Source: Piromyces finnis finn (taxonomy: Eukaryota; Fungi; Neocallimastigomycota). Taken from it: a DNA stretch of 64,000 nt. Location of the stretch: the NCBI GenBank assembly GCA_002104945.1, contig MCFH01000023.1, forward strand, positions 434,001 through 498,000. Direction: 5' to 3'. Under the pieces are notes generated by a model, which worked only from the letters and a program-made list of their open reading frames with translations, did not search any database and had not been told where the DNA came from. Within the stretch, counting starts at the first letter, position 1, and each line of letters begins with the position of its first letter. The position numbers were made by a program, and so were the translations under genes. Of this stretch, positions 3,593 to 55,145 are shown piece after piece.

Positions 3593-6500
3593 ATGAATGC
3601 AAAAGAAATTTTAAAAAAAATTTTCAAGTATGACTCTTTTCGAGATGGTCAAGAGCATATTATTAATTCAATTTTAAATGGTCAAGATGTATTGTCTATT
3701 ATGCCAACAGGTGGTGGAAAGTCAATATGTTATCAAATACCTTCATTAATGTTGGATGGAATTACTTATGTTATATCACCTTTAATTTCACTTATGCAAG
3801 ATCAAGTGAATGCATTAAAAGATTTAAAGATACAGGCATCTTGTATTAATTCAACTATTACAAAATCCGAAATTAATAAAATATATCAATCAATTAGAGA
3901 GGGTTTAACAAAAATTGTATATGTAGCACCCGAACGATTAGAAAATCAGGATTTCATTTGTTTTTCAAAAAATATTAATATATCAATGATAGCTATTGAT
4001 GAGGCTCATTGTATATCTCGATGGGGACAAGATTTTAGACCAAGTTATCTTAATATATTAGGTTTTATAAATACATTATCAAAACGTCCAATTATAAGTT
4101 GCTTTACAGCAACAGCAACAGAAGAAGTTAAAAGTGATATCATTGCTATTCTGAAACTTGACAACCCAGAAATTATTATCACTGGATATGATCGAAAAAA
4201 TTTGTATTATAAGGTTGAGCATATTGGAAAAAAGGTAAAAAAAATTGAATATATTGTTGACTTTTTAAAAAGTCACCCAAATGATAGTGGCATTATATAT
4301 TGTTTAACAAGAACAGATGTTGATGAATTAATGAATACATTAAATAAAAAAGATTTTTCGATTACAAAGTATCATGCAGGAATGGAAAACTCCGTAAGAA
4401 AACAAAATCAAGAAAAATTTACTAATGATGAAAATCGTATTATTGTTGCAACAAGTGCATTTGGCATGGGTATTGATAAACCCAATGTCAGATTCGTTAT
4501 CCATTATAATATACCTAAAACCATAGAGGACTATTATCAAGAATCAGGAAGAGCTGGTAGAGATGGAAAACCAGCCATATGTATATTATTTTATTCTTCT
4601 AGTGATTCATATAAAAATCAATATTTGATTTCAAAAAATCAAAATTTCCCTGATATTACATATAAAGATTTAACAAGACTTCAAAAAATGGAACACTATG
4701 GTGAAATAAAAGGTTGTCTTAGAAATTATATATTAGAATATTTCGGAGAAAAAAAAACAATACCATGCAATAATTGTGGTAATTGTGATCAAACTTACAT
4801 AAAAATTGATAAAACCGAAGATGCTAAATTGGTGATTAAATGTGTAGAGGAAATTAATAATAGCTATGGTATATCAACTATTATTAGTATTTTGAGGGGA
4901 TCACAAACATCAAAAATTAAAAAAAATAATTTACATTGCTGTAAATGTTTTGGTGCACTGAAGAGTCTTACAGATAATGATATACGGATGGTTATTGATC
5001 AGTTACTTGAAGATAACTATTTATTAAAAGTAAATAAAGTCATTAGTAATGGAAAAATGGTTACAACAATAGCATTAGGTGATAATTCGCCAATTAAGGA
5101 AGGAGATCATGTATATGTAAAAATGATTGAAAAAGAAAAACATGAAACTATCGAGGCCATTATTTATAAGCGAAGATTACTTCATGCATCAAATAATCAA
5201 TCTAAATCAAACCTAGAAAAGATTTTACCTGATAATTCAAATGATGTATTAAAAAGTTCCTATGAATCATATGTATTAAATAATACAGCTAATTCAAATG
5301 ACTCTGTAGTAAATCAATATGAATCAAATTTATTTAATAATTTAATAAACTTCAGTAATAGGTTTATCATTGAAATTAGAAAACTTCAATCTCTATGTGA
5401 AATTCAGAATAATGCAAATCAAATAGAGGATCAAAGTGGTAATATTAGATCTCAGTCTTTTCTTTCAGAAAGAAGTTTAATAATTGATGATAAAAATGAG
5501 ATAAATGAAGATTTAATTAAAAAACAAATAAATGATGAAGATGAATTAACATTGTCTACACCATCATCATTCGAAAAAAATAAAATAATAAAGTTTTCTA
5601 ATATTGAAAAGTTAATAGACATGAAACAAAATTTGTTAAAAGAACTTGCAGACTTACGTATTGAAATTGCAAAAAAAGAACAAATATCACCAAATGATAT
5701 TATTAGTAATAATTCTCTTATAGAAATGTGTATGAAACAGCCTGAAACTGAAAAACAATTATTGTTATTATTAGAGATTGATCAGCATAAATTTAAAAAC
5801 TATGGTTGTCAGTTTTTAAATATAATTAATAAATACAATTCTGTACGAATTGATTTAATAAAAAGTATCAATAATGATATCAATAAATATGATGAAATAT
5901 ATCTTCCTGAGGATATAAAAAAATTAGAAGATAAAGGAAAAAATGATGAATTTATTAAAGAAAAATTCAATATTTCTAATATTTCTGAAAAAAAAGATTT
6001 AAATATAGGATTATTGAATAAGGAAGAAGGAATTAAAATGAAAGATGAGAAAACATCTACATCAATGATCCAATTAGAGCAATGTAAAAATAATTTACTC
6101 CTTAATAACAATAGTAACATTATAAAAAAAAATACATTTGATGAAATATATTCAGATCAAAATTCTGAGAAAGCAGATAATAGTCAATTGTACAATAAAA
6201 AAATCAATGAAAATGAAAGTCTTAAAAAACTCACAAAAAATAATACTTCGAAAATGTATGAAAATAAAATTATGATAATAGATAATGATTTAAAATGCAA
6301 TGAGTCAAATAATGATAATAATGATTTTCAAATACGTAGTAATTTTAATAAAAAAGATTTTCAAACTTCAATAGAATACAAAAACAATTATATTAATATT
6401 GAAGAAAACACTAAAAGAAAAAGAACTGAAAATGTCCAATCACTAAACATAGAAAGTGAAATGGAGAAAATTGATTTATATAAAAGAAGACGATTGGAAT

Positions 6501-7579
6501 ATATTGAAAAAATAAGTAATTATCATTCTATTGAACGTAATTTGATGAAAAAATTGAAAGAGCTTCGTTCAGAAATTGCAAGTGAAGAAAACGAAGAAAA
6601 TTATTATAATATATTTGATGATTTAACATTAATTGAGTTATGTAAACGACTTCCTCAAAATGATGAAGAATTTTTAATGATATCAAATGTAAATGATTAT
6701 AAACTAAAAAAATATGGTTATAGATTTTTAGAAGTAATTAGAGAATATAATTCAATAGTTAAGGATGAAATGAATTCATTAATAAAAAATATGGAAGATG
6801 AAAGAGTAAACGATAAATCTTTTTTACAGGCAGATAAAAATATTGTAAATGAAAATAATAATATAAGTAATGTCATAAACAATAACCAAAATACAATTCA
6901 AATATATAAAAATAATGAATTTTTAAACCCTTCAAATATTAACTTTAATAATAATACTTCTCATAATAATAATATTAATAATGAAGAGGGTGATAATGAT
7001 GATAAAATTGTTAACAATGACATTAATAACAAAAAAAATGAAAATGGCAATGGTAGTATTAATAATATAGAAAATGAGAATAATAAAAAGGAAATTTTAA
7101 TTATTGATAATAATAGTAATAAAATAGTTACTGATGAAAATACAGGCGTTAGCATTGGTAATAAAAAAATTGACTATAACAAAGCCATTATAAATAGAGA
7201 AGAGAATAGTAAAAACAGCATTATTGTTAATAACAATAGCAATAATAACAACAATAACGACAATAATAAAATTAATATTGTAAATAAAACAACCATTACA
7301 AATAAGGACAAGTTTAACCTCTTTAAAAAGTTGAAGGAATTAAGAGATAAAATTGCAGATGAAGAAACAGTAAGACCTAATGAAATATTTAGTGATAAAA
7401 TACTTCTTGAAATATGTAAAAAATTACCAACAATTAAAGAAAATTTAAATAAAATAGACGGAATTGATTATTACATAATTAATGAATATGGATCCCAGGT
7501 TATTAAATTAATAATAGAATTCATAGAAAATAATAATAATAATGAAGAAAAACTCAAACATCATCATAAATTTTTATAG
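3593..7579 (+). CDS. recQ: Intronless bacterial-type ATP-dependent DNA helicase RecQ, 1328 aa: helicase core, Zn-binding, RQC and three HRDC domains
   Basis: Motifs seen: MPTGGGKS (Walker A), IAIDEAHCISRWGQDFRPSY (DEAH and aromatic loop), FTATAT, VATSAFGMGIDKPNVRFVIHY, YYQESGRAGRDG, the Zn ligands CLRNYILEYFGE..CNNCGNC and an RQC winged helix. HRDC-like repeats lie at ~5621-5836, ~6532-6750 and ~7306-7530. Confidence 0.96.
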   Translation: MNAKEILKKIFKYDSFRDGQEHIINSILNGQDVLSIMPTGGGKSICYQIPSLMLDGITYVISPLISLMQDQVNALKDLKIQASCINSTITKSEINKIYQSIREGLTKIVYVAPERLENQDFICFSKNINISMIAIDEAHCISRWGQDFRPSYLNILGFINTLSKRPIISCFTATATEEVKSDIIAILKLDNPEIIITGYDRKNLYYKVEHIGKKVKKIEYIVDFLKSHPNDSGIIYCLTRTDVDELMNTLNKKDFSITKYHAGMENSVRKQNQEKFTNDENRIIVATSAFGMGIDKPNVRFVIHYNIPKTIEDYYQESGRAGRDGKPAICILFYSSSDSYKNQYLISKNQNFPDITYKDLTRLQKMEHYGEIKGCLRNYILEYFGEKKTIPCNNCGNCDQTYIKIDKTEDAKLVIKCVEEINNSYGISTIISILRGSQTSKIKKNNLHCCKCFGALKSLTDNDIRMVIDQLLEDNYLLKVNKVISNGKMVTTIALGDNSPIKEGDHVYVKMIEKEKHETIEAIIYKRRLLHASNNQSKSNLEKILPDNSNDVLKSSYESYVLNNTANSNDSVVNQYESNLFNNLINFSNRFIIEIRKLQSLCEIQNNANQIEDQSGNIRSQSFLSERSLIIDDKNEINEDLIKKQINDEDELTLSTPSSFEKNKIIKFSNIEKLIDMKQNLLKELADLRIEIAKKEQISPNDIISNNSLIEMCMKQPETEKQLLLLLEIDQHKFKNYGCQFLNIINKYNSVRIDLIKSINNDINKYDEIYLPEDIKKLEDKGKNDEFIKEKFNISNISEKKDLNIGLLNKEEGIKMKDEKTSTSMIQLEQCKNNLLLNNNSNIIKKNTFDEIYSDQNSEKADNSQLYNKKINENESLKKLTKNNTSKMYENKIMIIDNDLKCNESNNDNNDFQIRSNFNKKDFQTSIEYKNNYINIEENTKRKRTENVQSLNIESEMEKIDLYKRRRLEYIEKISNYHSIERNLMKKLKELRSEIASEENEENYYNIFDDLTLIELCKRLPQNDEEFLMISNVNDYKLKKYGYRFLEVIREYNSIVKDEMNSLIKNMEDERVNDKSFLQADKNIVNENNNISNVINNNQNTIQIYKNNEFLNPSNINFNNNTSHNNNINNEEGDNDDKIVNNDINNKKNENGNGSINNIENENNKKEILIIDNNSNKIVTDENTGVSIGNKKIDYNKAIINREENSKNSIIVNNNSNNNNNNDNNKINIVNKTTITNKDKFNLFKKLKELRDKIADEETVRPNEIFSDKILLEICKKLPTIKENLNKIDGIDYYIINEYGSQVIKLIIEFIENNNNNEEKLKHHHKFL

Positions 7580-35706: not shown

Positions 35707-35950
35707 ATGACAAATATTAATCATCAAAATCTATATTACCTCACCGTAGTAAAGCAATCATTGGAAAAAAATACTTTAGCACTCGTTTCAACAGGGGTTG
35801 GTAAAACATTTTTATATACAGTGTTATTAGAATATTTTTCAGAAAAGAATGGTCAACAAAGTGTCTTTGATTCAGAGGATAATATACCAAAATTTAATAA
35901 TTTATTTAAATTTATAAAATTGGAAAATGAAAAGCATAACAAAAAAAGTA

Positions 35951-35991
<41 letters not shown>

Positions 35992-36118
35992 AACATAATA
36001 AATATAAATTATAAAGATGTATTATTAATTATATATTTTATTTTCAATTTATTTAAATAAACTAATATAATTTTTTTTATATATATATATTCTACTTTTT
36101 TTTTTTTTTTTTTAAAAA

Positions 36119-36149
<31 letters not shown>

Positions 36150-39100
36150 GATATTTAATATTTTAGCTAATATTAAAGAATTTGTAAATTCATCAAAATT
36201 TGAAGAGTTGTTAAAACAAAATCCAATTTCAAGGTCAAAGATTATTCAAAATACATTTAGTGTTAAACTAAGAATTAAATTAAAAAAATGGATGGGTTTA
36301 AAATTAATACTTCCATTCCACAAGAAAAAAGTAATATTTCTGGAATCCTCTCATTCAAACCTTCAAAAACAAATAATGGCATTAAGTACAGTTAGTGATT
36401 TTAAGGTTGGTTGGTTTTCAAATTCAGAACCTTTATCAACTTCAAGTTCAACCCCTAATTATTACTATAATAATAATATTAATAATTTCAATAATTATAA
36501 TTCTAATTATAATAGTTTAAATTACAATAACTATTATTTGGACAATAATTATAATAATCATAATTCAAATCACATAATATTTGATAACAATAATTTCGAA
36601 AATACAAATAATTTTAATTTTGATTATAAGGAAAGGAAATTCAATAATACAATTTTTAATGAAAATTCGAATTCTAATTATAAAATAAATTATGATAATA
36701 CTAATCCTATGAATTTTGAAACTTGTTGGGATATTGTTAATTTCATTATTAGTAATTATTCCAAAGAATCATTATTTTTAACACCTATTCAGTTTAAGTA
36801 CCTATTGGATATAGGATTACTAACATTTAATAGCAATATTAAATTAGTAGTAGTAGATCACTGTCAAACCATTCAAAGTAATAAAATGGATTATTCTTAT
36901 TATTCAAAAATAATGACTTTATATAAAGAAAATAAAAATGAAGATGATTTAACAGGCAATAAACTAAAAGAAATGGAGAATGGAAAATCTAATCAAAAAA
37001 TTAGAAAAAGAAGACGCTTAAATTCGGAAGAACAAAAACCATTTTATACAAGAATTGTGGGAATCATTGATAAAATAAAAGAAAATAAAAAAATCAATAT
37101 TGGTAATTTAGAGGAATTTTATCATTGCCAAATGATTTGGGTTGATAATATTGATTTTCCTTTAACATGTTCTAATGATATACAACTACAAAATTCTAAA
37201 AAAGAGCATCATAACTTAAATGGTAAATATAACAAAGAGTTGAAAGTAGATGCTCAATTAACTAATGAAATTTTTTTACAATTAAAGAAAGACGATTCCA
37301 TAATTGAGCAACATATTGAAAAGGTTTCTAACGAAAATTTAGATATTAAAAATGTAAGCCAACTTAGTTCTGTATTTTTTGCTAATGAATCTATGATTAT
37401 TTATTACCAATGTATTGATATAGACTGGAATATATATGATGAGCAGATTAAGTTTGAACAACAGAAACAAAAGCAGCAAAAGCCACAAGATAGTTTTTTT
37501 CATCAGCAATATAAGATACCGTCTATTCTTTTTACGGAAATGGAAAAAGCCAATATTAACGATCGTTTCAAAATTATTTTAATTATTTATGTTAAAGTAA
37601 TGGAATTTTTAGTTAAAAAAATGAGTTGGCTTAGTGATTATAAAAACTTAGAAAACACTAAACGATTAATTAAATTAATAAAAAATGAATATAAAGAATC
37701 AGGATTATGGTGTGCATGTAATTTGGCCCGAATTTATGTAGACAACTTATACCATGCATTTTGCTATCATATTATTAAAGAAGATTATAATTTACTCTTG
37801 AGTCGTCATTTTCAATATACCAAAGATTTATTGAAATGTTTTAATTTTGAAGATTTAAACAATAACCAATTCCTTTCACCTAAAGTTGTTAGCATTATTG
37901 AATGTCTAAATAATCATATTAAAAAAATTAACTATAAAAAGGTATTTATTAACAACAAAAAAAAAATTATAAAAGCGTATTAATTTGACATCATTCATAA
38001 ATTTTTTTAATATATAGAATTATTAAAAATATTATAAATTGTTAATGAAATATTGATAATATTTCTAACATAAATAATTATTTATTAAATAACATAATTT
38101 TGTTAAAAAAGAATAATTATCATTATGATTCCACCATTGATGATACAACATATAGAGGAATAATTGTTGTTAATCACCTAATGGGATTAAAAACTCTTAC
38201 CGAAATTTTAAATGAAATCCCAATGTTAAAAGAACAAGGAATTCGTTGTGGTTACTTAATGGAAGTTAATAGTAATTACGGTACATCTCATAAAACCAAT
38301 TACAATCAAAATCAGATTTTACAATTGTTCAATAAAAATCAAATAAATACCCTTATTATTACTAGAAAAATGTTGCAAGAATCATTAAAGTAAGTTTGGT
38401 TTTGATTAATTTTAAGTTATATTTACTGTCATCATAATAATATTTTTCTTATTGTAATTTTTACTATCTATTTGATATATTTATATGAAATAAATAAAAC
38501 AATATAATTTCTCATTTATTTTTTCGATATATATTCATTTAATATTATTTTAGGATTAATTATTTATCATTGATTATTGTTTCAGAATCCTTGACCTATT
38601 CTCAAGATTATTTAGATATTTATTATAGAGCAAATATGATGAAAAACCCAGATTTTGAAATAAAATTTATTATATCTGATGTGAAAAATTTAAGTGAAAC
38701 TGATAATTCAACGGCTTTAGATACAGTCTCATCTGACTATACCAGTGACAAAAATACTCTTTATAATACACTTTCCTTAATAGCTAAGGCTAAAATTAAA
38801 TTCCTAAAAGATCAAGGCTTAAGTAAACGTGATATTTTTAAAAAGAAAAAATCCAATGGAATAAGTAAAAATAACTCAAATGCTCAATTAATATTAGCAG
38901 ACCATTTTATATCAAATAATGAAAAATATGTTCATAATTATTTATGTGGAAACGATAAACCTCTTCACTCAGCCATTAATATTTCGATTTCATTAATGTC
39001 AGCTGAATCAATTTTAATTAAATTATTTTCATGCTCTCAAACCCTTCATCATTTTAAAAGCTTTCTTATTTATAATGTAGGCGTTTCAAAGCATAAGCAA

Positions 39101-42100
39101 TCATCATATTTATCTTCAAAGAATATAAATGATTCATCACTTAAATATAAAAAAGAAAAAATATGGAATGTTTACTATCGACAAAGACAAAATCAAATTT
39201 TACATCATAAGTGTTTAACTCATACTGAATGGAATCAATATTGGAGGAATGAAAAAAAATTGTTGAATATATCCGATGAATCAAATATTGTTGATAATTC
39301 TATAAATAATCAATTTGATACATTTGCTGATTCATCATCCCCAGCAATAAATTCATTCTCTAATTATTGCTATCCAATTACCGATTCTGAAGTCAAGAAT
39401 GATGAAGGAACAAATATTACTCTTCCATACGGCTTTGCTTATGCAATTCATTTACCATTTATGTCTTGTTCCCATGGCCTTATCAAAGAAGACAAAATTT
39501 TTATTGGACCAATTCGTTTAACGCGAAAGTTAGCTTATCAAGCTGTTATGCTGGAAATTTGTCAATATCTTTACACTGAACAAATTCTTGATTCTAATTT
39601 CTTGTTGTCATTAAAATCCCAAGGAATTATATCCCAATCAAATCATTATTATAATAGTGAAGAAGATTATTACAGAAACAGCAGAAAAGAAGATAATTCA
39701 TTTAGATATCTTGAAAATATCTCATATATAGAAAAAAATAAAAAACTAAAATTAGAGGGTAATTATATTTCTGATGATAAGCATTTTAAACTTCAATTAG
39801 AACATGGTATAAATAAAAAGAAAGAAGATGTTGAAGAAAACAAAGAAAATGAAGAAAATGAGGAAAAAAGAAAAGAAAAAGAAATTTTACCAAGTAGTAA
39901 TAATGACCAAGAAATTGATAGACCAGATTCTCTTTCTGAATATAAACGTCTTATTCCAAAGGCTTTGATAGCTGATAATCTTTGGGATTTCAATACTTTT
40001 TCGAAAGACAATAAAATTAAAAATATATATAAATTACAAAATGAAGAAACAGTTAAAGATCAATTAAAAAAAGAGGATGAGGACATGCATAAACAAAATG
40101 AATCGGCGGAAGAGAAAAAAGGAACTGATATAGATGTTAATATAGATCATAACGAAATTTTATATACTAAAGAAAAAGAAATAAAGCAATCTTATGAAAT
40201 GAAATTAATGGAAGGAAAGCAAGAAGATGAAAATTTAACAAAAAAATGTAACGATGGAATGGTAAAAGAAACGAGTGGACATGAATTTTATGTTACTATA
40301 TTTTCTTTTGGTCCTGAATTAGAACTTTACACTCGTAATACTTTACACTGTGATAATGCTTTTTATAATATTATTAACCAACCAGAAGAAAATACTAATT
40401 TAAAACCACCTTCAGAAATGTCAATAACAGAAGATAAGGAAGAAGGTGAATTAAAAGAAGATATAAACGAAGATGAAAATATGAATGAGAAAGAACCAAT
40501 AAAACTAGACAGAGAAGGAGAAAAATATTACATTAATGAAATTAAAAATACAAATTACTATTTTAAACCTGCAAAAGATAGAAATCTTTTTCTTTATAAT
40601 TCTAATGAAAAACAAAAGAAAATTGAACCTCGTCGTTCTTTTGCACTTATCACTAAACGCCCTATTCCTTCAAAAGAAATTTCAAATTTCTGTGTATGGT
40701 TAGATGGTAAGATATCTTGTAAAGTAAAAATTCTCCACTGGCATGATCAATCTCAAGAAGGGACTATTGGTATTGGTAATTGCTTTAAAGATGAAATTTT
40801 TGACTATAATATTAAAGAAAATTCATCAGAACCAACAAAAAAAGGAGATCAAAATTCTAACCATGATATTTCTTTTAAAGGCCTATACTATGAAAGTGAT
40901 GATGAAGATGATGATAATGATAATGATAATGATAATGATAATGATAATGATAAGAAAAATTATAGTATTGGTAATGAAGATCAAATTAGAAAAAATTGTC
41001 CAAAAGATTCTGAAAAATCTGTAGATAATAAAAGTGAATGTGAAAAAGTTAATCTTGATAAATCAGAAGCAAATATCTATCGAAAGATTACACTGACAGA
41101 TCAGCAAATTGAAGCTATGACAGAATTTCAAGAGTATTTTTGGAATATGGTGATGTGGGGTCAACCTAGATCCTTAAAAAGAAAATCAACAACGCAGGTA
41201 CCCTTAAAATATAATGAAAATGATGTAGAAAATGAAAATAACAAAATAAATAATAGTGAAATTAGGATACCTATCATACCGGATTCTGAGTGTCGTATGT
41301 ATATGATTTTACCAGTTATAGGTTTCCCTCTTTTTGATAATTATAATTCAAAAGAAAAAGAGTCTGATACTAATATCAGTGATGAAAATGATTTGTCCTT
41401 CTTAATCAAAGATTATGAACTTTTAAAAAAATGGAAAAATAATTATACTAAACGTTGGCCAAAACTTCCTGAAATACCAGACCCAATCCTTTGTAAATGG
41501 GAGATTGATTGGTCTTTAATAGATAAAGTAGTTCAAGGCCCAAAAATATCATTGTATACATGGATTCGTACAGTGGGAGAGTATATATCTTTGAAAGAAA
41601 AAGAAAAAGAAAATAATTCTATATCAATAGGAATTAAAAAATATAATATAATTAAGCAAGTAGCAGAAGAAACAAAAACTACGCCTATTATATACACTTC
41701 ATCATTTCATGCGCATAATAATTCCAAATTACATAACAAAAATGTATTATACTTTAAAACTCGAAATAGTTTTGATGTATTATATGATATGGCATTAAAA
41801 ATGGAAAATGAAAATATATATAAAAACATCGAAGGGCAATCAGATCCTTCTGTTACATATTCCCCAGAAGTCATGAAAAAATTAGATATGGCAATGAATC
41901 AAACTTTTATACTAACGGAGCATAATAATAATCGATATCGTTTGAAAAAGGTTCGTCAAGATATTACCCCCAAAACAGAATTCTATTCTTCTCGTTATAA
42001 AATTTCACTCAGTTATTTAGATTACGCAACCATAACAAATAAAGCAACTGTCATTGAACATCCTAATTCAGTAATGGTTGAAGCATCTCATATAAAAATT

Positions 42101-45100
42101 TCCACAAATATGTTAAAGCCTTCTTCACAATGGCATTTATTATTCCCAAAATATAAATCAATAAATGAAACTAAAAATCAATCGGTAACATCTACAACTT
42201 CTTCGCATTCTAATAAACCTAAAACGACAAGCAATAAATCAAATTCTTCTATTTTTTTAATTCCAGATATTTGTAAAATTTTACCGGTACCAATGGAGCT
42301 CTTCCAATTAGCTTATTTAATTCCTTCATTAATTCACCGTATTGACCGTTACATGATTGTCAATCAATTTAAGAATAAATTAAATCTTCCTATTACCCAT
42401 AATCAAACACTCTTTTCTGCTTTTTGTTCATGTTCTGCTCATGAAGGATCTAATTATGAACGTTTAGAAAATTTAGGTGATTCTTTCATCAAATTTGCTG
42501 TATCAATCGATATCTTCAGAAAATATCCTAATTTAGATGAAGGAGGTATGACTTTTCACCGTGGTAAAATTATTTGTAATAAAAATCTTTATGAAATTGC
42601 ACTTCGTAAAAAGTTTGATGAGTTAATATTTGTAAATGCTTTTAATCCAAAAGGATGGCATCCTCCAAATGTACAAACGCCATATGCCTATATTCCAGTG
42701 GAAATTTCTAATAATAATACATCCAGTAATAATACAAACCTTAACACAATAAATCCTGACATAAATTCAAAAGATAATAGTAAAGAAAAGACATTTTCTT
42801 CTATTGATTCAAACGCTAATTCTTCAACAATACCCATTTCTAATAATAGTATAACTACCAGTAGTATCAATACAGATAATACACAAAAATCCTCTGATAT
42901 AAAGGTAAATTCACAATCAGTATCCAATACTGATTCTCCAAAAACTTTAATAGATACTCTAAAGGAAGGAGTCAAGCATAATAATAATAGCCAAAATAAT
43001 AATATCAACCATAATAATAATAGTACTGATCTTTCTACAACTAAATCTAAACAAAAGAAGAAATCAAAGAAGTTAGATAATACTATATCTCTTTATCAAA
43101 GTTCAAAGGGACCACTCTGGCGTGTTATTTCTAAAAAAACATTAGCTGATTTTGTCGAGTCCTTAACAGCAGCATATTATGTTGAGAGCGGTTTAAATAC
43201 AGCCATTCGATTCTGTCGTATTATTGGTTTGGTTTCTGAAAACACAGGTCAATGCTTTAAAAATAATTCACATACTAAAATTGATATGAATGAAGAAAGT
43301 AAAGATAAATTGAAACTCGCCCAATCTGTTATCAATAGTGATGTGAATCGTTTTATTATAATTTATAAACATTTATATCAAGCAAAGTTTAATGATCTTA
43401 AAAAAGTTAATTATGGCTTCATTAATAATAATATTTTTTATCAATATATGCAAAATACTTATAAACAAGAAGCAAATAATTCTAGTATTAATAATTATTC
43501 AAATTCCATGAATTTAATGAAATATAATACCTATTCTTCAAATGCTGATAATACCTATAATGACTCTTATTATCCAAAAAGAAAGTATGATGACTATGGA
43601 ACACCAATAATACTAAATGAAGAATTATCAATGAGTGATACTTATCAAGATTCCAGTATTAATAGGAAAAAAAGAAGAAAAAGAAATAAGCACCATAGGA
43701 TGTCAAATGAAGATGCAGAGTATAATCAAATATCTGAGAATATTCTTTTTGATCAAGATTTTTCTTTAGAAACTCCTACTCCAAAAGCATCACACCCATC
43801 AAGAAGTAGCTCAGATTCCTCGCCACTTTTAATGAGTAATAAAAAAATAGAACCAATAATAGTTGACTCGTCATCAAAAGAAAAGACAATGCCTTCTTTT
43901 CTTCAAATTAATGAAAGTATTGAAAATAAACTTAAATTATTTTACCAATCTAAGATTAGAAATGAAAATGACATATCATTACAATATCTTGCCAAAATTT
44001 TCCCATTTGATGCTATAGAAGAAAAACTTCATTATCATTTTAAGAACAGGTTATATTTGGTGGAAGCCTTTACTCATGCCTCATATACAACTGTTATTAC
44101 ACATAATTATGAGCGCTTAGAATTTTTAGGAGATGCTACATTAGATTGGATCCTTATTCGCTTTTTCTATTTAACTTATCCATCCGCTACTGCAGCAGAA
44201 CTTAGTGAACTTCGTCAGGCAGCGGTTAATAACGAATCCTTGGCTCGACTTTCCATTAGTTTAGGATATCATTACTATTTAATGCATCATTCCCCAAATT
44301 TACAAAACGAAATTTCCATGTATATTGATATGTTAGAAAAGAAAAGAATTCATCTTAATCAAGATTCATCATTAACCCAACCACAAAATATAAAAATCTC
44401 TACAAAAAAGAATAGTAAAAAGAATACAACTTTAAATTCTTCCAGTACTAATATCAAATCAGATATTAGCACGTACCCAGAAGTTGCAGACCAACATCCA
44501 CTCCAAAGTACATATGAAGGTCCAAAAGTTCTTGGTGATCTTTTTGAAGCTGTAATTGGTGCAGTTCTTGTTGATTCTAATTATAATGTTGCCACTGTTT
44601 GGCGTGTCTTCCGTCCTCTTCTTAGTGATTTCTTAGATAAGCACGCCTCACTTGAAAATCTTAGTCAAAGTACAGTTCGTGGCGTTCATGAATATTGTCA
44701 AAAATTAGGTTTTGCTGTGAATGATTTACAGTATAGGTAAGTTATTTTAAAATATATAAATACAAATTTAAAAAATTTAAAAAATTATAAAATACTATAA
44801 AATTATATGCTAGATCATCTATAACAGAAGCATATTGTTTTTCATTAAATATTAATTTTTAAATCTTTTTTGTTTAAAAATAATGACCCATTTTTCTAAT
44901 ATAATTTTATTTATTAATAATATTATTCAATTTTTATAGTTATAGAAAAATTAATCCATTACAAAATCGCTATAGAAATTATTCACCTATTCATGATGCA
45001 ATTCCACATTATTCCTACGAGGTGTATGAATGTCATCTCTACCTTTGTGATATGACTTTAAGTATTGGATATGGTAATACACAGATGGCCTCTAAACGTT

Positions 45101-45939
45101 CCGCTACTGGTAAAGCCATTGAATGGCTTCATAATCATCCCGAGGAAATACAATTAATTTTAAATCGTAAGAAGGATACTATCGTTAAAGAAAATATGAT
45201 GATGGATCCATTAAATAATAATACCCATTATATAAAAACTAATAAATATAATTCTTTGGAATCAACTACTTCAACTTTATCTCAATCATCCCCATTAAAT
45301 GTTCATATCAAGTTTGATGATGATGATAATGATAATGATAATGATGAAATGAAAAACCAAAAAAATACTGAAATTAGAAATGAAAATGAAAATGAGCATA
45401 ATGATAATAAAATAGAACAAAAATTTGAAACTGATGATGACGATAAAGAAGAAGGTGAGATAGAAGAAAGTGATTTAGAAGAAAACAAATATAAGGAAGA
45501 AGAAGAAAATAAAATTATTCCACATCAATCTGATTATGCCCTACTGGAAAAGAAAAAAGGAAATAAAATAGAAGAAAAGAATAAAAATATTTCAATCAAG
45601 ATTAATACAAAGACAGTAGAATATAATGATGATGATATTTCAAGTAACGATAGTAGTGACAGTAGCAGTAGTAGTACCGATAATGAAGAAGGAGAAATTG
45701 ATAAAAATAATAGTATTATTAAAAGATATCCAAAGAATAGTAATATTGATTTTTTGAAAACGCTAAATTTTAATGAAGAGGAGCAAAATATATATGAAGA
45801 AACTAGCTCTATTAGTGATGATGATGATGATGATGATGATTCGGAATCTTCAGATTCAGAATCTGAAAGTTATTATATTGATAGTACTGATCAAGATAGT
45901 GATGAAGAAGACAGTAACGATAGTAGTGAATCCTCTTAA
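35707..45939 (+). CDS. DCL: Dicer-like RNase III, ~3,158 aa; exons 35707-35947, 36167-37941, 38112-38389, 38554-44736, 44940-45939
   Basis: Domains in order: helicase-like N-terminus (STGVGKT), DUF283-like segment (IGPIRLTRKLAYQAVMLEICQYLY), PAZ-like segment (~41890-42290), RNase IIIa (ERLENLGDS...ADFVE), RNase IIIb (ERLEFLGDA...PKVLGDLFEAVIGA), a dsRBD split by the last intron, and an acidic tail. All four GT-AG introns keep phase, and the summed CDS is 9477 nt. Confidence 0.93.
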
Positions 45940-53764: not shown

Positions 53765-55145
53765 TCAATTATAATAACATATTAATTCTATCTCTTGTTT
53801 TATTTTAAATATATTAATAGTTGTATTTGGTAAGTAAAAAATAAAAAAAAAAAAAATCTGTATTCATTATAAAAAAAAAAAATTATAATATAAATCAATG
53901 TTAATAATAATATTATTATTATATTTAAAGGTCGTGTTGTTAGTGGTTATAAAATTGTAGAAAAAATTGAAAATGTTCAAACCGATGAAAAAGATTGTCC
54001 TATTTTACCTGTAGTAATTTCAAATTGTGGTGAATTAGAATTAAGAAAAGTAGTAAAAAAGGTTCCTAAAAAGGAAGAACCTAAAAAAAAAGAAGAAACA
54101 AAAAAAGAAAATAAAACCGAAAAAAAGAAAAAGAGAAAACAAATTAAATCATATTCCAGTTCAGATTCTGATTCTGATTCATATTCATCTGGCTCGGAAT
54201 CAAGTTCTGGATATGATTCTTATAGTGATTCAAGTTCATATTCCGGATCTAGTGGTTATTCCTCATACTCTGATAGTTCAACAGATAGTGAAAGTGAAAA
54301 TGATCATAAAAAAAATAAAAAAAAGAGCCGTAAACATAAAAAATTAAAAAAGCATTCTTCAAAAAAGCATAAAGAAGAAAAAAAATTAAATAAAAAGAAA
54401 TCTAAATCATCATATTCTGATTCTGGTTCTGATTCAGAATCCGAGCATCACAATGACGATAAGAAGAAAGATAAATTACAAGAGAAGGATAAAAAAATAA
54501 CATCTGAAGAAAATAAAAAGGAAATAGAAAACAAAAAAGACAAAAAAGACAATGATGGTAAAATCGAAAAGAAAAAAGAAAAAAGCAGAGGAAGAAGCAA
54601 AAGTAGGAGCAGAAGTAGGAGCAGGAGTCGTTCTGATAGTAGAAGCAGTAAGAGAAGCATAAGTGATAGTGAAAGTGAAGAAGAAGGAGAAATAAGAAGA
54701 AAAAGGAAGAGAAGTTGGAGTAGAAGTCGGAGTAGAAGTAGAAGCTGGAGTAGAAATAATAATAGAAGATATAGAGATAAATATAGATACAGAAGTAGAA
54801 GCAGAAGTAGAAGCAGAGACAGATATAGTAGAAATAAGCGATCTCAAGATCACTGGAAAAATGATTCTTCGTTCAGACCTCGTAATAATTATCGTCAAAG
54901 AGATAGTCGTTTGGAAGTCTATAACGAATATAGAAGAAGTGATCCACCAATTGCCTCATCTAACATAGATGTATCTAAAATAAAATATAAAGGAAGAGGA
55001 CGTATGATGGTAAGTAGTTAATTATTCAAAACAATAACATAATTATATAATATATAATAATAATTTTAAATAAATTAACATTTTATTTATTTACTTTTAT
55101 TATAATCCCTAATTATTGTAGTATCGTAGAGATTGGACTAAATAA
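51968..55145 (+). CDS. Cyclophilin-type PPIase with Lys/Ser-rich and RS domains (PPIG/CypRS-like); exons 51968-52106, 52900-52989, 53128-53145, 53252-53351, 53491-53515, 53618-53663, 53821-53829, 53931-55009, 55122-55145
   Basis: The spliced product reads [98 protein letters not shown]. It continues into RSRSRSRS repeats and a C-terminal [11 protein letters not shown]. Confidence 0.9.
53698..53762. repeat. (ATT)n microsatellite in cyclophilin intron 6
   Basis: A run of TTA repeats directly visible in the sequence. Confidence 0.9.

What the first reader, a model, noticed from the sequence alone, without database searches (positions are those of the whole stretch)
40439..45699. Three EEGE[IL] ARS2/SERRATE-recruiting-like motifs plus NLS-like patches in Dicer: candidate nuclear microprocessor-like system
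Seen: KEEGEL (40439-40453), KEEGEI (45448-45462) and NEEGEI (45685-45699) sit in acidic disordered regions where Gly is otherwise rare; two are in a ~250-aa acidic tail after the dsRBD. Basic NLS-like clusters are KIRKRRRL (36997-37020) and RKKRRKRNKHHR (43664-43699). Known: the acidic E[ED]GE[ILV] short linear motif recruits ARS2 (S. pombe Red1; human ZFC3H1 and ZC3H18). ARS2's plant ortholog SERRATE partners DCL1 in nuclear pri-miRNA processing. The nuclear RS-cyclophilin in this window carries the same motif (EEGEI, 54680-54694). Inference: this Dicer may dock directly on ARS2 and the cap-binding complex to process capped hairpin transcripts, a plant-like arrangement I do not know to be described in fungi. 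Acidic tracts can produce such motifs by chance.
Basis: partly seen in the sequence, partly recalled or inferred. Interest (0 to 1): 0.72.

Follow-up and report, generated by a model that had tools for sequence, protein, structure and literature searches.

The report
ARS2-docking motif conserved in gut-fungal Dicer
A giant Dicer (the enzyme that cuts double-stranded RNA into small RNAs) of an anaerobic gut fungus carries one short acidic peptide, conserved in four related fungi, that matches the known docking motif for the cap-associated protein ARS2, plus conserved nuclear-import-like patches, so the enzyme may be brought to newly made capped RNAs in the nucleus; binding itself has not been tested.

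Summary
All three EEGE[IL] peptides and both basic patches translate as described, and they sit in one five-exon Dicer gene (35707-45939, about 3,158 aa) with two intact RNase III centres.

The motifs are not a by-product of composition:
- Local shuffles predict 0.02-0.05 matches to [ED][ED]GE[ILV] per protein; three are seen.
- 125 other Dicers hold seven in total, none of them conserved.

Conservation separates the three:
- **Motif 1 (40439-40453):** K-E-[ED]-G-E-[LI] in 4 of 4 gut-fungal orthologues. It lies in an otherwise variable acidic loop, and 4 of its 6 codons show synonymous changes.
- **Motif 2 (45448-45462):** only the KEEGE core is kept in Neocallimastix, where position 5 is Thr.
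- **Motif 3 (45685-45699):** specific to this lineage.

Both NLS-like patches are conserved in every orthologue that covers them (three for one, five for the other). An orthologous transcript contig shows that the acidic tail is spliced onto the RNase III exon.

Not tested:
- whether this genome has ARS2;
- whether the peptides bind it;
- where the enzyme sits in the cell;
- whether it processes hairpins.

No indexed paper links this motif to a Dicer. In Neurospora, BiFC detected no ARS2-DCL-1 contact.

Verdict: a credible new carrier of a known motif. The microprocessor-like reading remains speculative.

The parts
35707..45939 (+). Dicer-like gene. Inferred model has five exons: 35707-35947, 36167-37941, 38112-38389, 38554-44736 and 44940-45939 (stop at 45937-45939). 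Coding length is 9,477 nt, about 3,158 aa.
   Evidence: GT-AG sites read. Exon phases add up to a multiple of 3. Each exon has a homologous ORF in L002, L007 or L008. Only the last junction is backed by transcript evidence, and that comes from an orthologue.
35707..35947 (+). Exon 1, with a helicase motif I-like GVGKT.
   Evidence: Translation; conserved in L002 (TGIGKT). Pfam detects no helicase domain in exons 2 or 3; exon 1 itself was not scanned.
36997..37020 (+). Basic patch 1, KIRKRRRL (about residues 358-365): candidate monopartite NLS in a variable insert of the helicase region.
   Evidence: QK[IV][RK]K[RK]RRLN is conserved in the window, L002 and L008.
40436..40453 (+). Motif 1, KEEGEL (EEGEL is about residues 1394-1398): canonical ARS2-recruitment-type motif in a variable acidic loop between the DUF283-like region and RNase IIIa.
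   Evidence: Aligned K-E-[ED]-G-E-[LI] in the window, L001, L002 and L007. The flanks differ and carry indels. K, E, E/D and L/I codons vary synonymously or conservatively.
42400..43400 (+). RNase IIIa domain (approximate), with a long Asn/Ser-rich insert. Signature residues ERLENLGD and DFVES are present.
   Evidence: Pfam, (two stretches of PF00636); sequence.
43664..43699 (+). Basic patch 2, RKKRRKRNKHHR (about residues 2469-2480): candidate NLS in the variable IIIa-IIIb linker.
   Evidence: KK(R/K)R(R/K)K(R/K) is conserved in P0001, P0002, P0122/P0131 (Neocallimastix type) and P0123 (Pecoramyces), while the flanks diverge.
44060..44580 (+). RNase IIIb domain, with ERLEFLGD and DLFEA present.
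   Evidence: Pfam PF00636 at ORF residues 1848-2003. 81-84% identical to orthologues.
44737..44939 (+). Last intron (GTAAGT...TTTATAG). It splits the C-terminal dsRBD-like fold.
   Evidence: The equivalent 410-nt GT..AG intron is absent from transcript-type contig L012 when compared with genomic L011.
44940..45220 (+). Second half of a dsRBD-like module (VYECHLYLCD...GYGNTQMASKRSATGKAIEWL).
   Evidence: Strongly conserved with Neocallimastix. Pfam gives no dsrm hit, so the fold assignment rests on resemblance only.
45221..45936 (+). Acidic, Ser/Asn-rich C-terminal tail of about 240 aa. Conserved islands: HIKFDD, RYPKN and SESY-YIDS followed by an acidic run.
45445..45462 (+). Motif 2, KEEGEI (EEGEI is about residues 2996-3000).
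   Evidence: It aligns with KEEGET in Neocallimastix (ATA versus ACA); the core is conserved and position 5 is not.
45682..45699 (+). Motif 3, NEEGEI (EEGEI is about residues 3075-3079).
   Evidence: It aligns with an E/D run without Gly in Neocallimastix, so it is lineage-specific.
54680..54694 (+). EEGEI between RS repeats and RRKRKR, in the last exon of a cyclophilin with an RS/KS-rich tail (a separate gene).
   Evidence: The exon starts with the end of Pro_isomerase (PF00160, E 4.7e-4, just under the cut-off). Conservation was not tested.

Best explanation
The locus encodes a giant Dicer of about 3,158 aa in an anaerobic gut fungus (Neocallimastigomycota). Both of its RNase III centres are intact.

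Shown:
- It carries one evolutionarily fixed short linear motif, K-E-[ED]-G-E-[LI]. The motif sits in a variable acidic loop and fits the ARS2-recruitment motif exactly.
- This species has two further canonical copies in the acidic C-terminal tail.
- Two classical NLS-like basic patches are conserved.

Inferred mechanism:
- The enzyme is imported into the nucleus.
- Motif 1 binds the basic zinc-finger 'effector' surface of the C-terminal leg of ARS2, as Red1, ZFC3H1, FLASH, NCBP3 and ZC3H18 do with low-micromolar affinity.
- In this species the tail copies would add avidity.
- Dicer would then sit on the cap-binding complex-ARS2 platform of nascent capped Pol II transcripts. There it would compete with decay and export effectors.
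- It would cut whatever double-stranded parts those transcripts form.

Gut fungi lack an RNA-dependent RNA polymerase. Hairpins or sense-antisense Pol II transcript pairs are therefore the plausible dsRNA sources. Which of the two is used is open.
For: - **Motif identity and excess over chance:**
- **Motif 1 conservation:** 4 of 4 orthologues spanning Piromyces-like and Neocallimastix lineages, inside a loop with indels and about 11% invariant columns. Four of its six codons vary synonymously.
- **Motif 2:** the core KEEGE is kept at the aligned position.
- **Tail is part of the Dicer mRNA:** orthologous spliced contig.
- **NLS-like patches:** conserved in three and in five orthologues within variable segments.
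- **Motif definition:** consensus (E/D)(D/E)G(E)(L/I/V), multiple copies per effector, location in disordered regions, Leu accepted at position 5.
- **ARS2 contacts with Dicers or Drosha elsewhere:** Dcr-2 in flies and DCL1 in plants, as cited in PMC6803386.
- **No RdRP in gut fungi:** PMC5796279.
Against: - No ARS2 gene or protein of this fungus was examined, so the partner is assumed from its wide distribution in eukaryotes.
- No binding, structural or localisation evidence exists.
- The AlphaFold model of the motif-1 region was uninformative (pLDDT 28.7), so disorder is inferred only from composition and indels.
- The tail copies are not canonical in Neocallimastix (KEEGET, KEEGEE, KEEGKD). 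Mutation of the position-5 Ile abolishes Red1-Ars2 binding.
- The recurrence of KEEG with a free fifth position could point to a different reader of the motif.
- In Neurospora, BiFC showed no ARS2-DCL-1 contact.
- Only four orthologues, all from one phylum, were available. Chytrid Dicers lack the motif.
Confidence: 0.45

Rival explanations
1. The conserved acidic K-E-E-G-E element is functional but is read by something other than ARS2. One option is an intramolecular nucleic-acid mimic that folds back on the dsRBD or the basic patches to gate RNA binding. Another is a docking site for a different basic-surface partner, such as an importin, a dsRNA-binding cofactor or an Argonaute.
For: - In Neocallimastix the tail repeats KEEG three times with T, E or K-D after it. 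What recurs is therefore KEEG(E), not the hydrophobic fifth residue that ARS2 needs.
- A Lys precedes the motif in most copies, and the ARS2 consensus does not require it.
- Neurospora ARS2 does not contact DCL-1 in BiFC.
Against: - Motif 1 keeps L or I at position 5 in all four orthologues, and its only other substitution is E to D at position 2. That is exactly the variation the ARS2 consensus allows.
- No other described motif class with this pattern was met in the papers read.
Confidence: 0.25
2. The motifs are chance products of D/E-rich low-complexity sequence in an AT-rich genome, where GAA or GAT turns into GGA or GGT in one step. They have no function.
For: - Motif 3 has no counterpart in Neocallimastix, and motif 2 loses its hydrophobic residue there.
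- Isolated matches occur in other Dicers at about chance rate and are not conserved in their relatives.
Against: - Three matches against 0.02-0.05 expected, with 0 of 5000 local shuffles reaching three. This stays improbable after correcting for a few hundred motif classes.
- Motif 1 is invariant in register in four orthologues with synonymous codon variation, while the surrounding loop diverges.
Confidence: 0.1
3. The full plant-like reading: this Dicer is the catalytic core of a nuclear microprocessor that, docked on ARS2 and the cap-binding complex, excises miRNA-like small RNAs from capped hairpin precursors.
For: Everything that supports ARS2 docking and nuclear import. The absence of RdRP in gut fungi favours hairpin or antisense sources of dsRNA. 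SERRATE-DCL1 is the plant precedent.
Against: - No hairpin loci, small-RNA data or HYL1-like partner were examined.
- Docking on ARS2 would serve equally well for siRNA production from sense-antisense pairs or for RNA surveillance.
- In two ascomycetes ARS2 is either not needed for small-RNA production or does not contact Dicer.
Confidence: 0.15

Closest known systems
ARS2-recruitment motif (ARM, 'EDGEI'; ELM LIG_ARS2_EDGEI_1) of S. pombe Red1 and human ZFC3H1, ZC3H18, ZC3H4, FLASH, NCBP3 and PHAX
   Same: - Same five-residue pattern [ED][ED]GE[ILV].
- Acidic, apparently disordered context.
- More than one copy per protein.
- Carried by a nuclear RNA-processing factor.
- Conserved as an island within variable sequence.
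   Different: - The carrier is a Dicer, which no indexed paper lists among ARM-bearing effectors.
- Binding is untested.
- Only one of the three copies is conserved across genera.
Arabidopsis DCL1-SERRATE-HYL1 dicing complex
   Same: A nuclear Dicer-like enzyme physically coupled to the ARS2 orthologue and through it to the cap-binding complex; NLS-bearing Dicer.
   Different: - As summarised in the papers read, SERRATE binds DCL1 directly, but no ARM peptide in DCL1 was named there.
- No HYL1-like partner or miRNA loci were examined here.
- The fungal enzyme is about twice as long, and Pfam does not recognise its helicase.
Drosophila Dcr-2-Ars2 interaction (Sabin et al. 2009, as cited in PMC6803386 and PMC12922007)
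   Same: An siRNA-type Dicer that physically associates with ARS2.
   Different: - The papers read name no motif on the fly Dicer.
- Insect Dcr-2 sequences in the hit list carry no match to the motif.
Fungal Dicer-like proteins of chytrids and Dikarya (for example Geranomyces DCL1-like, Neurospora DCL-1)
   Same: Nearest sequence relatives through the RNase III domains (34-44% identity over about 12% of the query); same tandem RNase III core.
   Different: - They are 1,400-2,100 aa long.
- Pfam recognises helicase, DUF283 and often PAZ domains in them.
- They lack the conserved ARM, and Neurospora DCL-1 shows no ARS2 contact.

Membership tests
Dicer / Dicer-like RNase III | Two tandem RNase III domains in one polypeptide | tested here: met
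   PF00636, E 3.2e-36, two stretches in the 2056-aa ORF.
Dicer / Dicer-like RNase III | Catalytic acidic residues in both RNase III centres | tested here: met
   Read. IIIa has ERLENLGD ... DFVES. IIIb has ERLEFLGD ... DLFEA. All are invariant in orthologues.
Dicer / Dicer-like RNase III | N-terminal DExD/H helicase module | tested here: inconclusive
   GVGKT in exon 1 and helicase-like blocks in exons 2-4. Pfam reports no helicase family in exons 2 or 3, even at E up to 10; exon 1 was not scanned.
Dicer / Dicer-like RNase III | Dicer dimerisation (DUF283) and PAZ/platform domains | tested here: inconclusive
   PF03368 scores 16.8 bits, below its 23.7 cut-off. There is no PAZ hit. The AlphaFold model was unusable.
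Dicer / Dicer-like RNase III | Closest relatives are Dicers | tested here: met
   373 hits. After two gut-fungal orthologues, the best are chytrid and other fungal, plant and animal Dicer-like proteins.
ARS2-recruitment motif (ELM LIG_ARS2_EDGEI_1) | Sequence pattern (E/D)(D/E)G(E)(L/I/V) | tested here: met
   EEGEL, EEGEI and EEGEI. Consensus taken.
ARS2-recruitment motif (ELM LIG_ARS2_EDGEI_1) | Lies in an accessible, disordered region | tested here: inconclusive
   Windows of +/-20 residues hold 24-47% D/E and 16-18% order-promoting residues, against 31% for exons 4-5 overall. The motif-1 loop has indels between orthologues. The structure prediction gave no usable confidence.
ARS2-recruitment motif (ELM LIG_ARS2_EDGEI_1) | Conserved in orthologues while the flanks drift | tested here: met
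   Met for motif 1 only: 4 of 4 orthologues with synonymous codon changes. Motif 2 keeps only its core and motif 3 is not conserved.
ARS2-recruitment motif (ELM LIG_ARS2_EDGEI_1) | The organism has ARS2 with the basic effector surface on its C-terminal zinc-finger leg | not tested
The scan's notes hold no ARS2 gene for this genome. ARS2 is reported in most eukaryotes except S. cerevisiae.
ARS2-recruitment motif (ELM LIG_ARS2_EDGEI_1) | Direct, salt-sensitive, micromolar binding that is lost on mutating E1 or I5 | not testable with these tools
   Needs ITC or pull-down, or at least a complex prediction with the cognate ARS2.
Plant-type nuclear dicing complex (DCL1-SERRATE-HYL1) | Nuclear localisation of the Dicer | not testable with these tools
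   The only evidence is conserved K/R patches of classical NLS type.
Plant-type nuclear dicing complex (DCL1-SERRATE-HYL1) | Hairpin precursors and miRNA-like products; dsRBP cofactor | not tested
No cofactor search was made.

The most novel reading that the evidence does not exclude
In anaerobic gut fungi, which have no RNA-dependent RNA polymerase, Dicer has become a true ARS2 effector. Imported through its conserved NLS patches, it docks by a fixed EDGEI-type motif on the cap-binding complex-ARS2 platform. There it competes with decay adaptors such as the motif-bearing ZCCHC8-like protein. It dices capped hairpin or sense-antisense transcripts co-transcriptionally. This would be an independently evolved, motif-based counterpart of the plant DCL1-SERRATE arrangement.
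Probability: 0.2. Interest if true: 0.8.

Novelty: new variant of a known kind. Interest (0 to 1): 0.55.

Why it matters
ARS2 sorts capped nuclear transcripts by letting effectors with the same short motif compete for one surface. So far the known effectors serve decay, termination, export or histone-mRNA processing.

A Dicer that carries a conserved copy of the motif would add RNA interference to that competition. It would also give a simple molecular explanation of how ARS2 and Dicers are coupled, which is known genetically or by pull-down in flies and plants without a defined peptide.

It would further suggest how fungi without an RdRP feed Pol II transcripts into RNAi. The prediction can be tested with two recombinant pieces and a few point mutants, even though these fungi are hard to manipulate genetically.

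A practical by-product: public gene models of this Dicer are fragments, so the full-length model is itself useful.

Tried and rejected
- **Tail word search:** found nothing, and it even missed the Neocallimastix tail that the exhaustive search later found. It was probably swamped by low-complexity words.
- **Metagenome scans:** two scans, with the tail and with an RNase IIIb alignment, returned no orthologues, only 30%-identical RNase III loci (L003-L006).
- **L008:** the longest contig of the L001-type orthologue shows no last exon within 900 nt of the intron start. That lineage's tail stayed unknown.
- **AlphaFold2 of the 721-aa motif-1 region:** with a 4-sequence alignment it gave pLDDT 28.7, so no fold or disorder call was taken from it.
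- **PDB search with the motif-1 peptide:** no match.
- **Plasmid search:** empty and irrelevant in hindsight.
- **Supplement search for gut-fungal ARS2:** the supplement of the SERRATE evolution paper held nothing.
- **A general C-terminal ARM in fungal Dicers, considered and rejected:** three other Dicers (P0079, P0119, P0126) have a match near the C-terminus. Six other Sordariomycete DCL-1 proteins, relatives of P0079, lack it, and the total is at chance level.
- **Recent internal duplication as the source of the three copies, rejected:** their codons and flanks differ.
Full report
**What is there**

The window is extremely AT-rich: 13-28% G+C. An earlier follow-up of this scan names the genome Piromyces finnis. 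I did not verify the species. The closest orthologous locus with a species label is Neocallimastix californiae, GCA_002104975.1, so an anaerobic gut fungus is certain.

The finding lies in one gene on the + strand. The ORFs are 35707-36060, 36148-37983, 38100-38393, 38570-44740 and 45022-45939. They join through GT-AG introns whose phases add up. The resulting exons are 35707-35947, 36167-37941, 38112-38389, 38554-44736 and 44940-45939. The total is 9,477 coding bases, about 3,158 aa.

Pfam finds two RNase III domains, and the catalytic E/D/D/E residues are present in both. A sub-threshold Dicer dimerisation domain is the only other Pfam signal. No helicase family is recognised, although exon 1 has GVGKT.

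The nearest relatives outside gut fungi are chytrid Dicer-like proteins, which match only through the RNase III region.

**Is the tail part of the gene?**

Yes, as far as orthologues can show. A 2,095-nt JGI contig (L012) encodes one 676-aa ORF that runs from RNase IIIb through ...NDLQYS-YRKINPL... into the acidic tail. Aligned to the genomic contig L011 of the same lineage, it lacks a 410-nt GT..AG intron at exactly the junction inferred for the window.

Direct RNA evidence from this species could not be obtained. Four runs hold the stretch. Nothing was laid.

**Check of the observation**

All peptides translate as written. The given coordinates cover the five codons EEGE[IL]; the K or N codon lies just upstream.

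Chance does not explain the three motifs:
- With the protein's own composition, 0.02 matches to [ED][ED]GE[ILV] are expected.
- Shuffling within blocks of 200 down to 20 residues, which keeps local acidity and local Gly content, gives 0.03-0.05. None of 5,000 shuffles reaches three.
- The three motif glycines are the only glycines in the protein with five or more D/E within five residues.
- The motif occurs four times in all six-frame ORFs of the 64-kb window: three times here and once in the RS-cyclophilin.
- Of the eight [ED][ED]xE[ILV] words in long ORFs, four have Gly at x.
- Among 125 other Dicer-like proteins there are seven matches. Three of them sit near a C-terminus. For one of these (P0079), six other Sordariomycete DCL-1 proteins lack the match.

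| Element | Orthologues compared | Result |
|---|---|---|
| Motif 1 | window, L001, L002, L007 (N. californiae) | DKEEGEL, EKEEGEI, NKEDGEL, DKEEGEL, in register |
| Motif 2 | window, Neocallimastix (L007, L011, L012) | KEEGEI versus KEEGET (ATA versus ACA) |
| Motif 3 | window, Neocallimastix | NEEGEI aligns with a Gly-free acidic run |
| Basic patch 1 | window, L002, L008 | QK[IV][RK]K[RK]RRLN in all three |
| Basic patch 2 | window, P0001, P0002, Neocallimastix type, Pecoramyces | KK(R/K)R(R/K)K(R/K) in all five lineages |

Motif 1 sits in a loop between two strongly conserved blocks. Apart from the motif, that loop has indels and about one invariant column in nine. The substitutions seen are the ones the published consensus tolerates: E to D at position 2, and L to I at position 5. 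The Lys, Glu, Glu/Asp and Leu/Ile codons differ synonymously or conservatively between lineages. The constraint therefore acts on the peptide.

Tails could be compared only with Neocallimastix (L007, L011, L012). The apparent frameshift in the N. californiae assembly is an assembly error, because L011 and L012 read through it. Neocallimastix has two more KEEG words elsewhere in its tail (KEEGEE and KEEGKD), neither with the hydrophobic fifth residue.

Mutating Ile36 of Red1 abolishes Ars2 binding. The Neocallimastix tail copies should therefore not be counted as canonical.

In short, one motif is fixed across the group. The extra tail copies are a feature of this lineage. A looser KEEG(E) theme recurs in both tails.

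**The basic patches**

Both patches lie inside otherwise variable segments. They fit the classical monopartite NLS pattern. That they act as NLSs is an inference.

**What is known**

- The consensus (E/D)(D/E)G(E)(L/I/V) is an established ARS2-recruitment motif. It binds the basic zinc-finger surface of the ARS2 C-terminal leg with micromolar, salt-sensitive affinity.
- It often occurs in two or three copies and always in disordered regions. Leu is accepted at position 5. ELM lists it as LIG_ARS2_EDGEI_1.
- ARS2 contacts Dcr-2 in flies, and SERRATE binds DCL1 in plants.
- In fungi, ARS2 and the cap-binding complex promote meiotic silencing in Neurospora. There ARS2 touches the Argonaute but not DCL-1 in BiFC.
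- Fusarium ARS2 is dispensable for small-RNA production. A Botrytis paper assumes a plant-like complex by homology only.
- Gut fungi have Dicer, Argonaute, QDE-3 and QIP but no RdRP.
- No indexed paper combines ARS2, Dicer and EDGEI, or 'ARS2 recruitment motif' and Dicer.

**Interpretation**

The best-supported reading is that motif 1 is a functional short linear motif and that ARS2 is its most likely reader. Every position matches the consensus, and the observed substitutions are the permitted ones. Together with the conserved NLS-like patches, this suggests a nuclear Dicer docked on the cap-binding complex-ARS2 platform. I put this at about 0.45.

The main rival, at 0.25, is a different reader or an intramolecular role. 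The KEEG theme with a free fifth position in Neocallimastix tails points that way. Pure chance is unlikely for motif 1 (0.1) but quite possible for motif 3.

The further step to a microprocessor-like hairpin pathway is not supported by anything examined here (0.15). Sense-antisense pairs or surveillance substrates would fit equally well.

**What could not be done**

- I could not check whether this genome encodes ARS2.
- The structure prediction failed.

**Public annotation**

The N. californiae orthologue is filed as two fragments: 'ribonuclease III, partial' (389 aa) and a 193-aa hypothetical protein that is the frameshifted tail. No full-length model of this window's gene was found in the protein collection.

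**Verdict**

One conserved ARS2-type motif in a Dicer is a new carrier for a known motif class. The mechanistic reading is plausible and cheaply testable, but it remains unproven.

Noticed in passing
L007:10440-10510 (N. californiae MCOG01000144.1): The public assembly has a one-base frame error in an A/G-rich run of the Dicer tail. The annotated 193-aa protein ORY37127.1 therefore ends in a false Met/Lys/Ile run. The Illumina contig L011 and the transcript contig L012 read straight through as ...NKGKEKEEGEEEDDDD...
   Followed up: yes
L007:6507-10582; P0124, P0121: The N. californiae Dicer is publicly annotated only as fragments: a 389-aa 'ribonuclease III, partial' and a 193-aa hypothetical protein. 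The genomic ORF alone is 2,419 aa. No full-length model of the window's gene appeared in the protein collection.
   Followed up: partly
window 45800-45936: The extreme C-terminus keeps a conserved island, SESY(I)YIDS, followed by an Asp/Glu/Ser run in both Piromyces-type and Neocallimastix tails. RYPKN lies upstream. The hydrophobic core plus acidic/Ser run looks like a SUMO-interaction-type motif; this comes from memory and was not tested.
   Followed up: no
window 35707-38640: The helicase region keeps a Walker A-like GVGKT in exon 1 and has VVVDHCQ where DECH is expected. It also carries long Asn-rich inserts. Pfam recognises no helicase domain in exons 2 or 3 at all; exon 1 was not scanned.
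   Followed up: partly
window 53894-55018: This is the last exon of a cyclophilin with a long RS/KS-rich tail. Its single EEGEI sits between RS repeats and RRKRKR. RS-rich human proteins (THRAP3, PRPF4B) are on the published list of motif carriers. Conservation was not tested.
   Followed up: partly
window 3593-7579: An intronless 1,328-aa RecQ helicase with DEAD, Helicase_C, RecQ_Zn_bind and RQC domains and three HRDC stretches. Another reader flagged it as a possible bacterial transfer.
   Followed up: no
L001:1880-1960: The L001-type orthologue has a Gly-rich acidic stretch (DGEEGEKPEEEEDGEKDKEGEGEE) upstream of motif 1. It has several EEGE/EDGE cores but Lys at position 5. This is another case of the core recurring without the hydrophobic residue.
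   Followed up: no
Nothing was laid, and the places were left out of all later searches.
   Followed up: no
L008:9910-10807: In the L001-type orthologue, no last exon is visible within 900 nt after the RNase IIIb exon. Its last intron is much longer than in the window (203 nt) or Neocallimastix (410 nt), or the contig ends too early.
   Followed up: no
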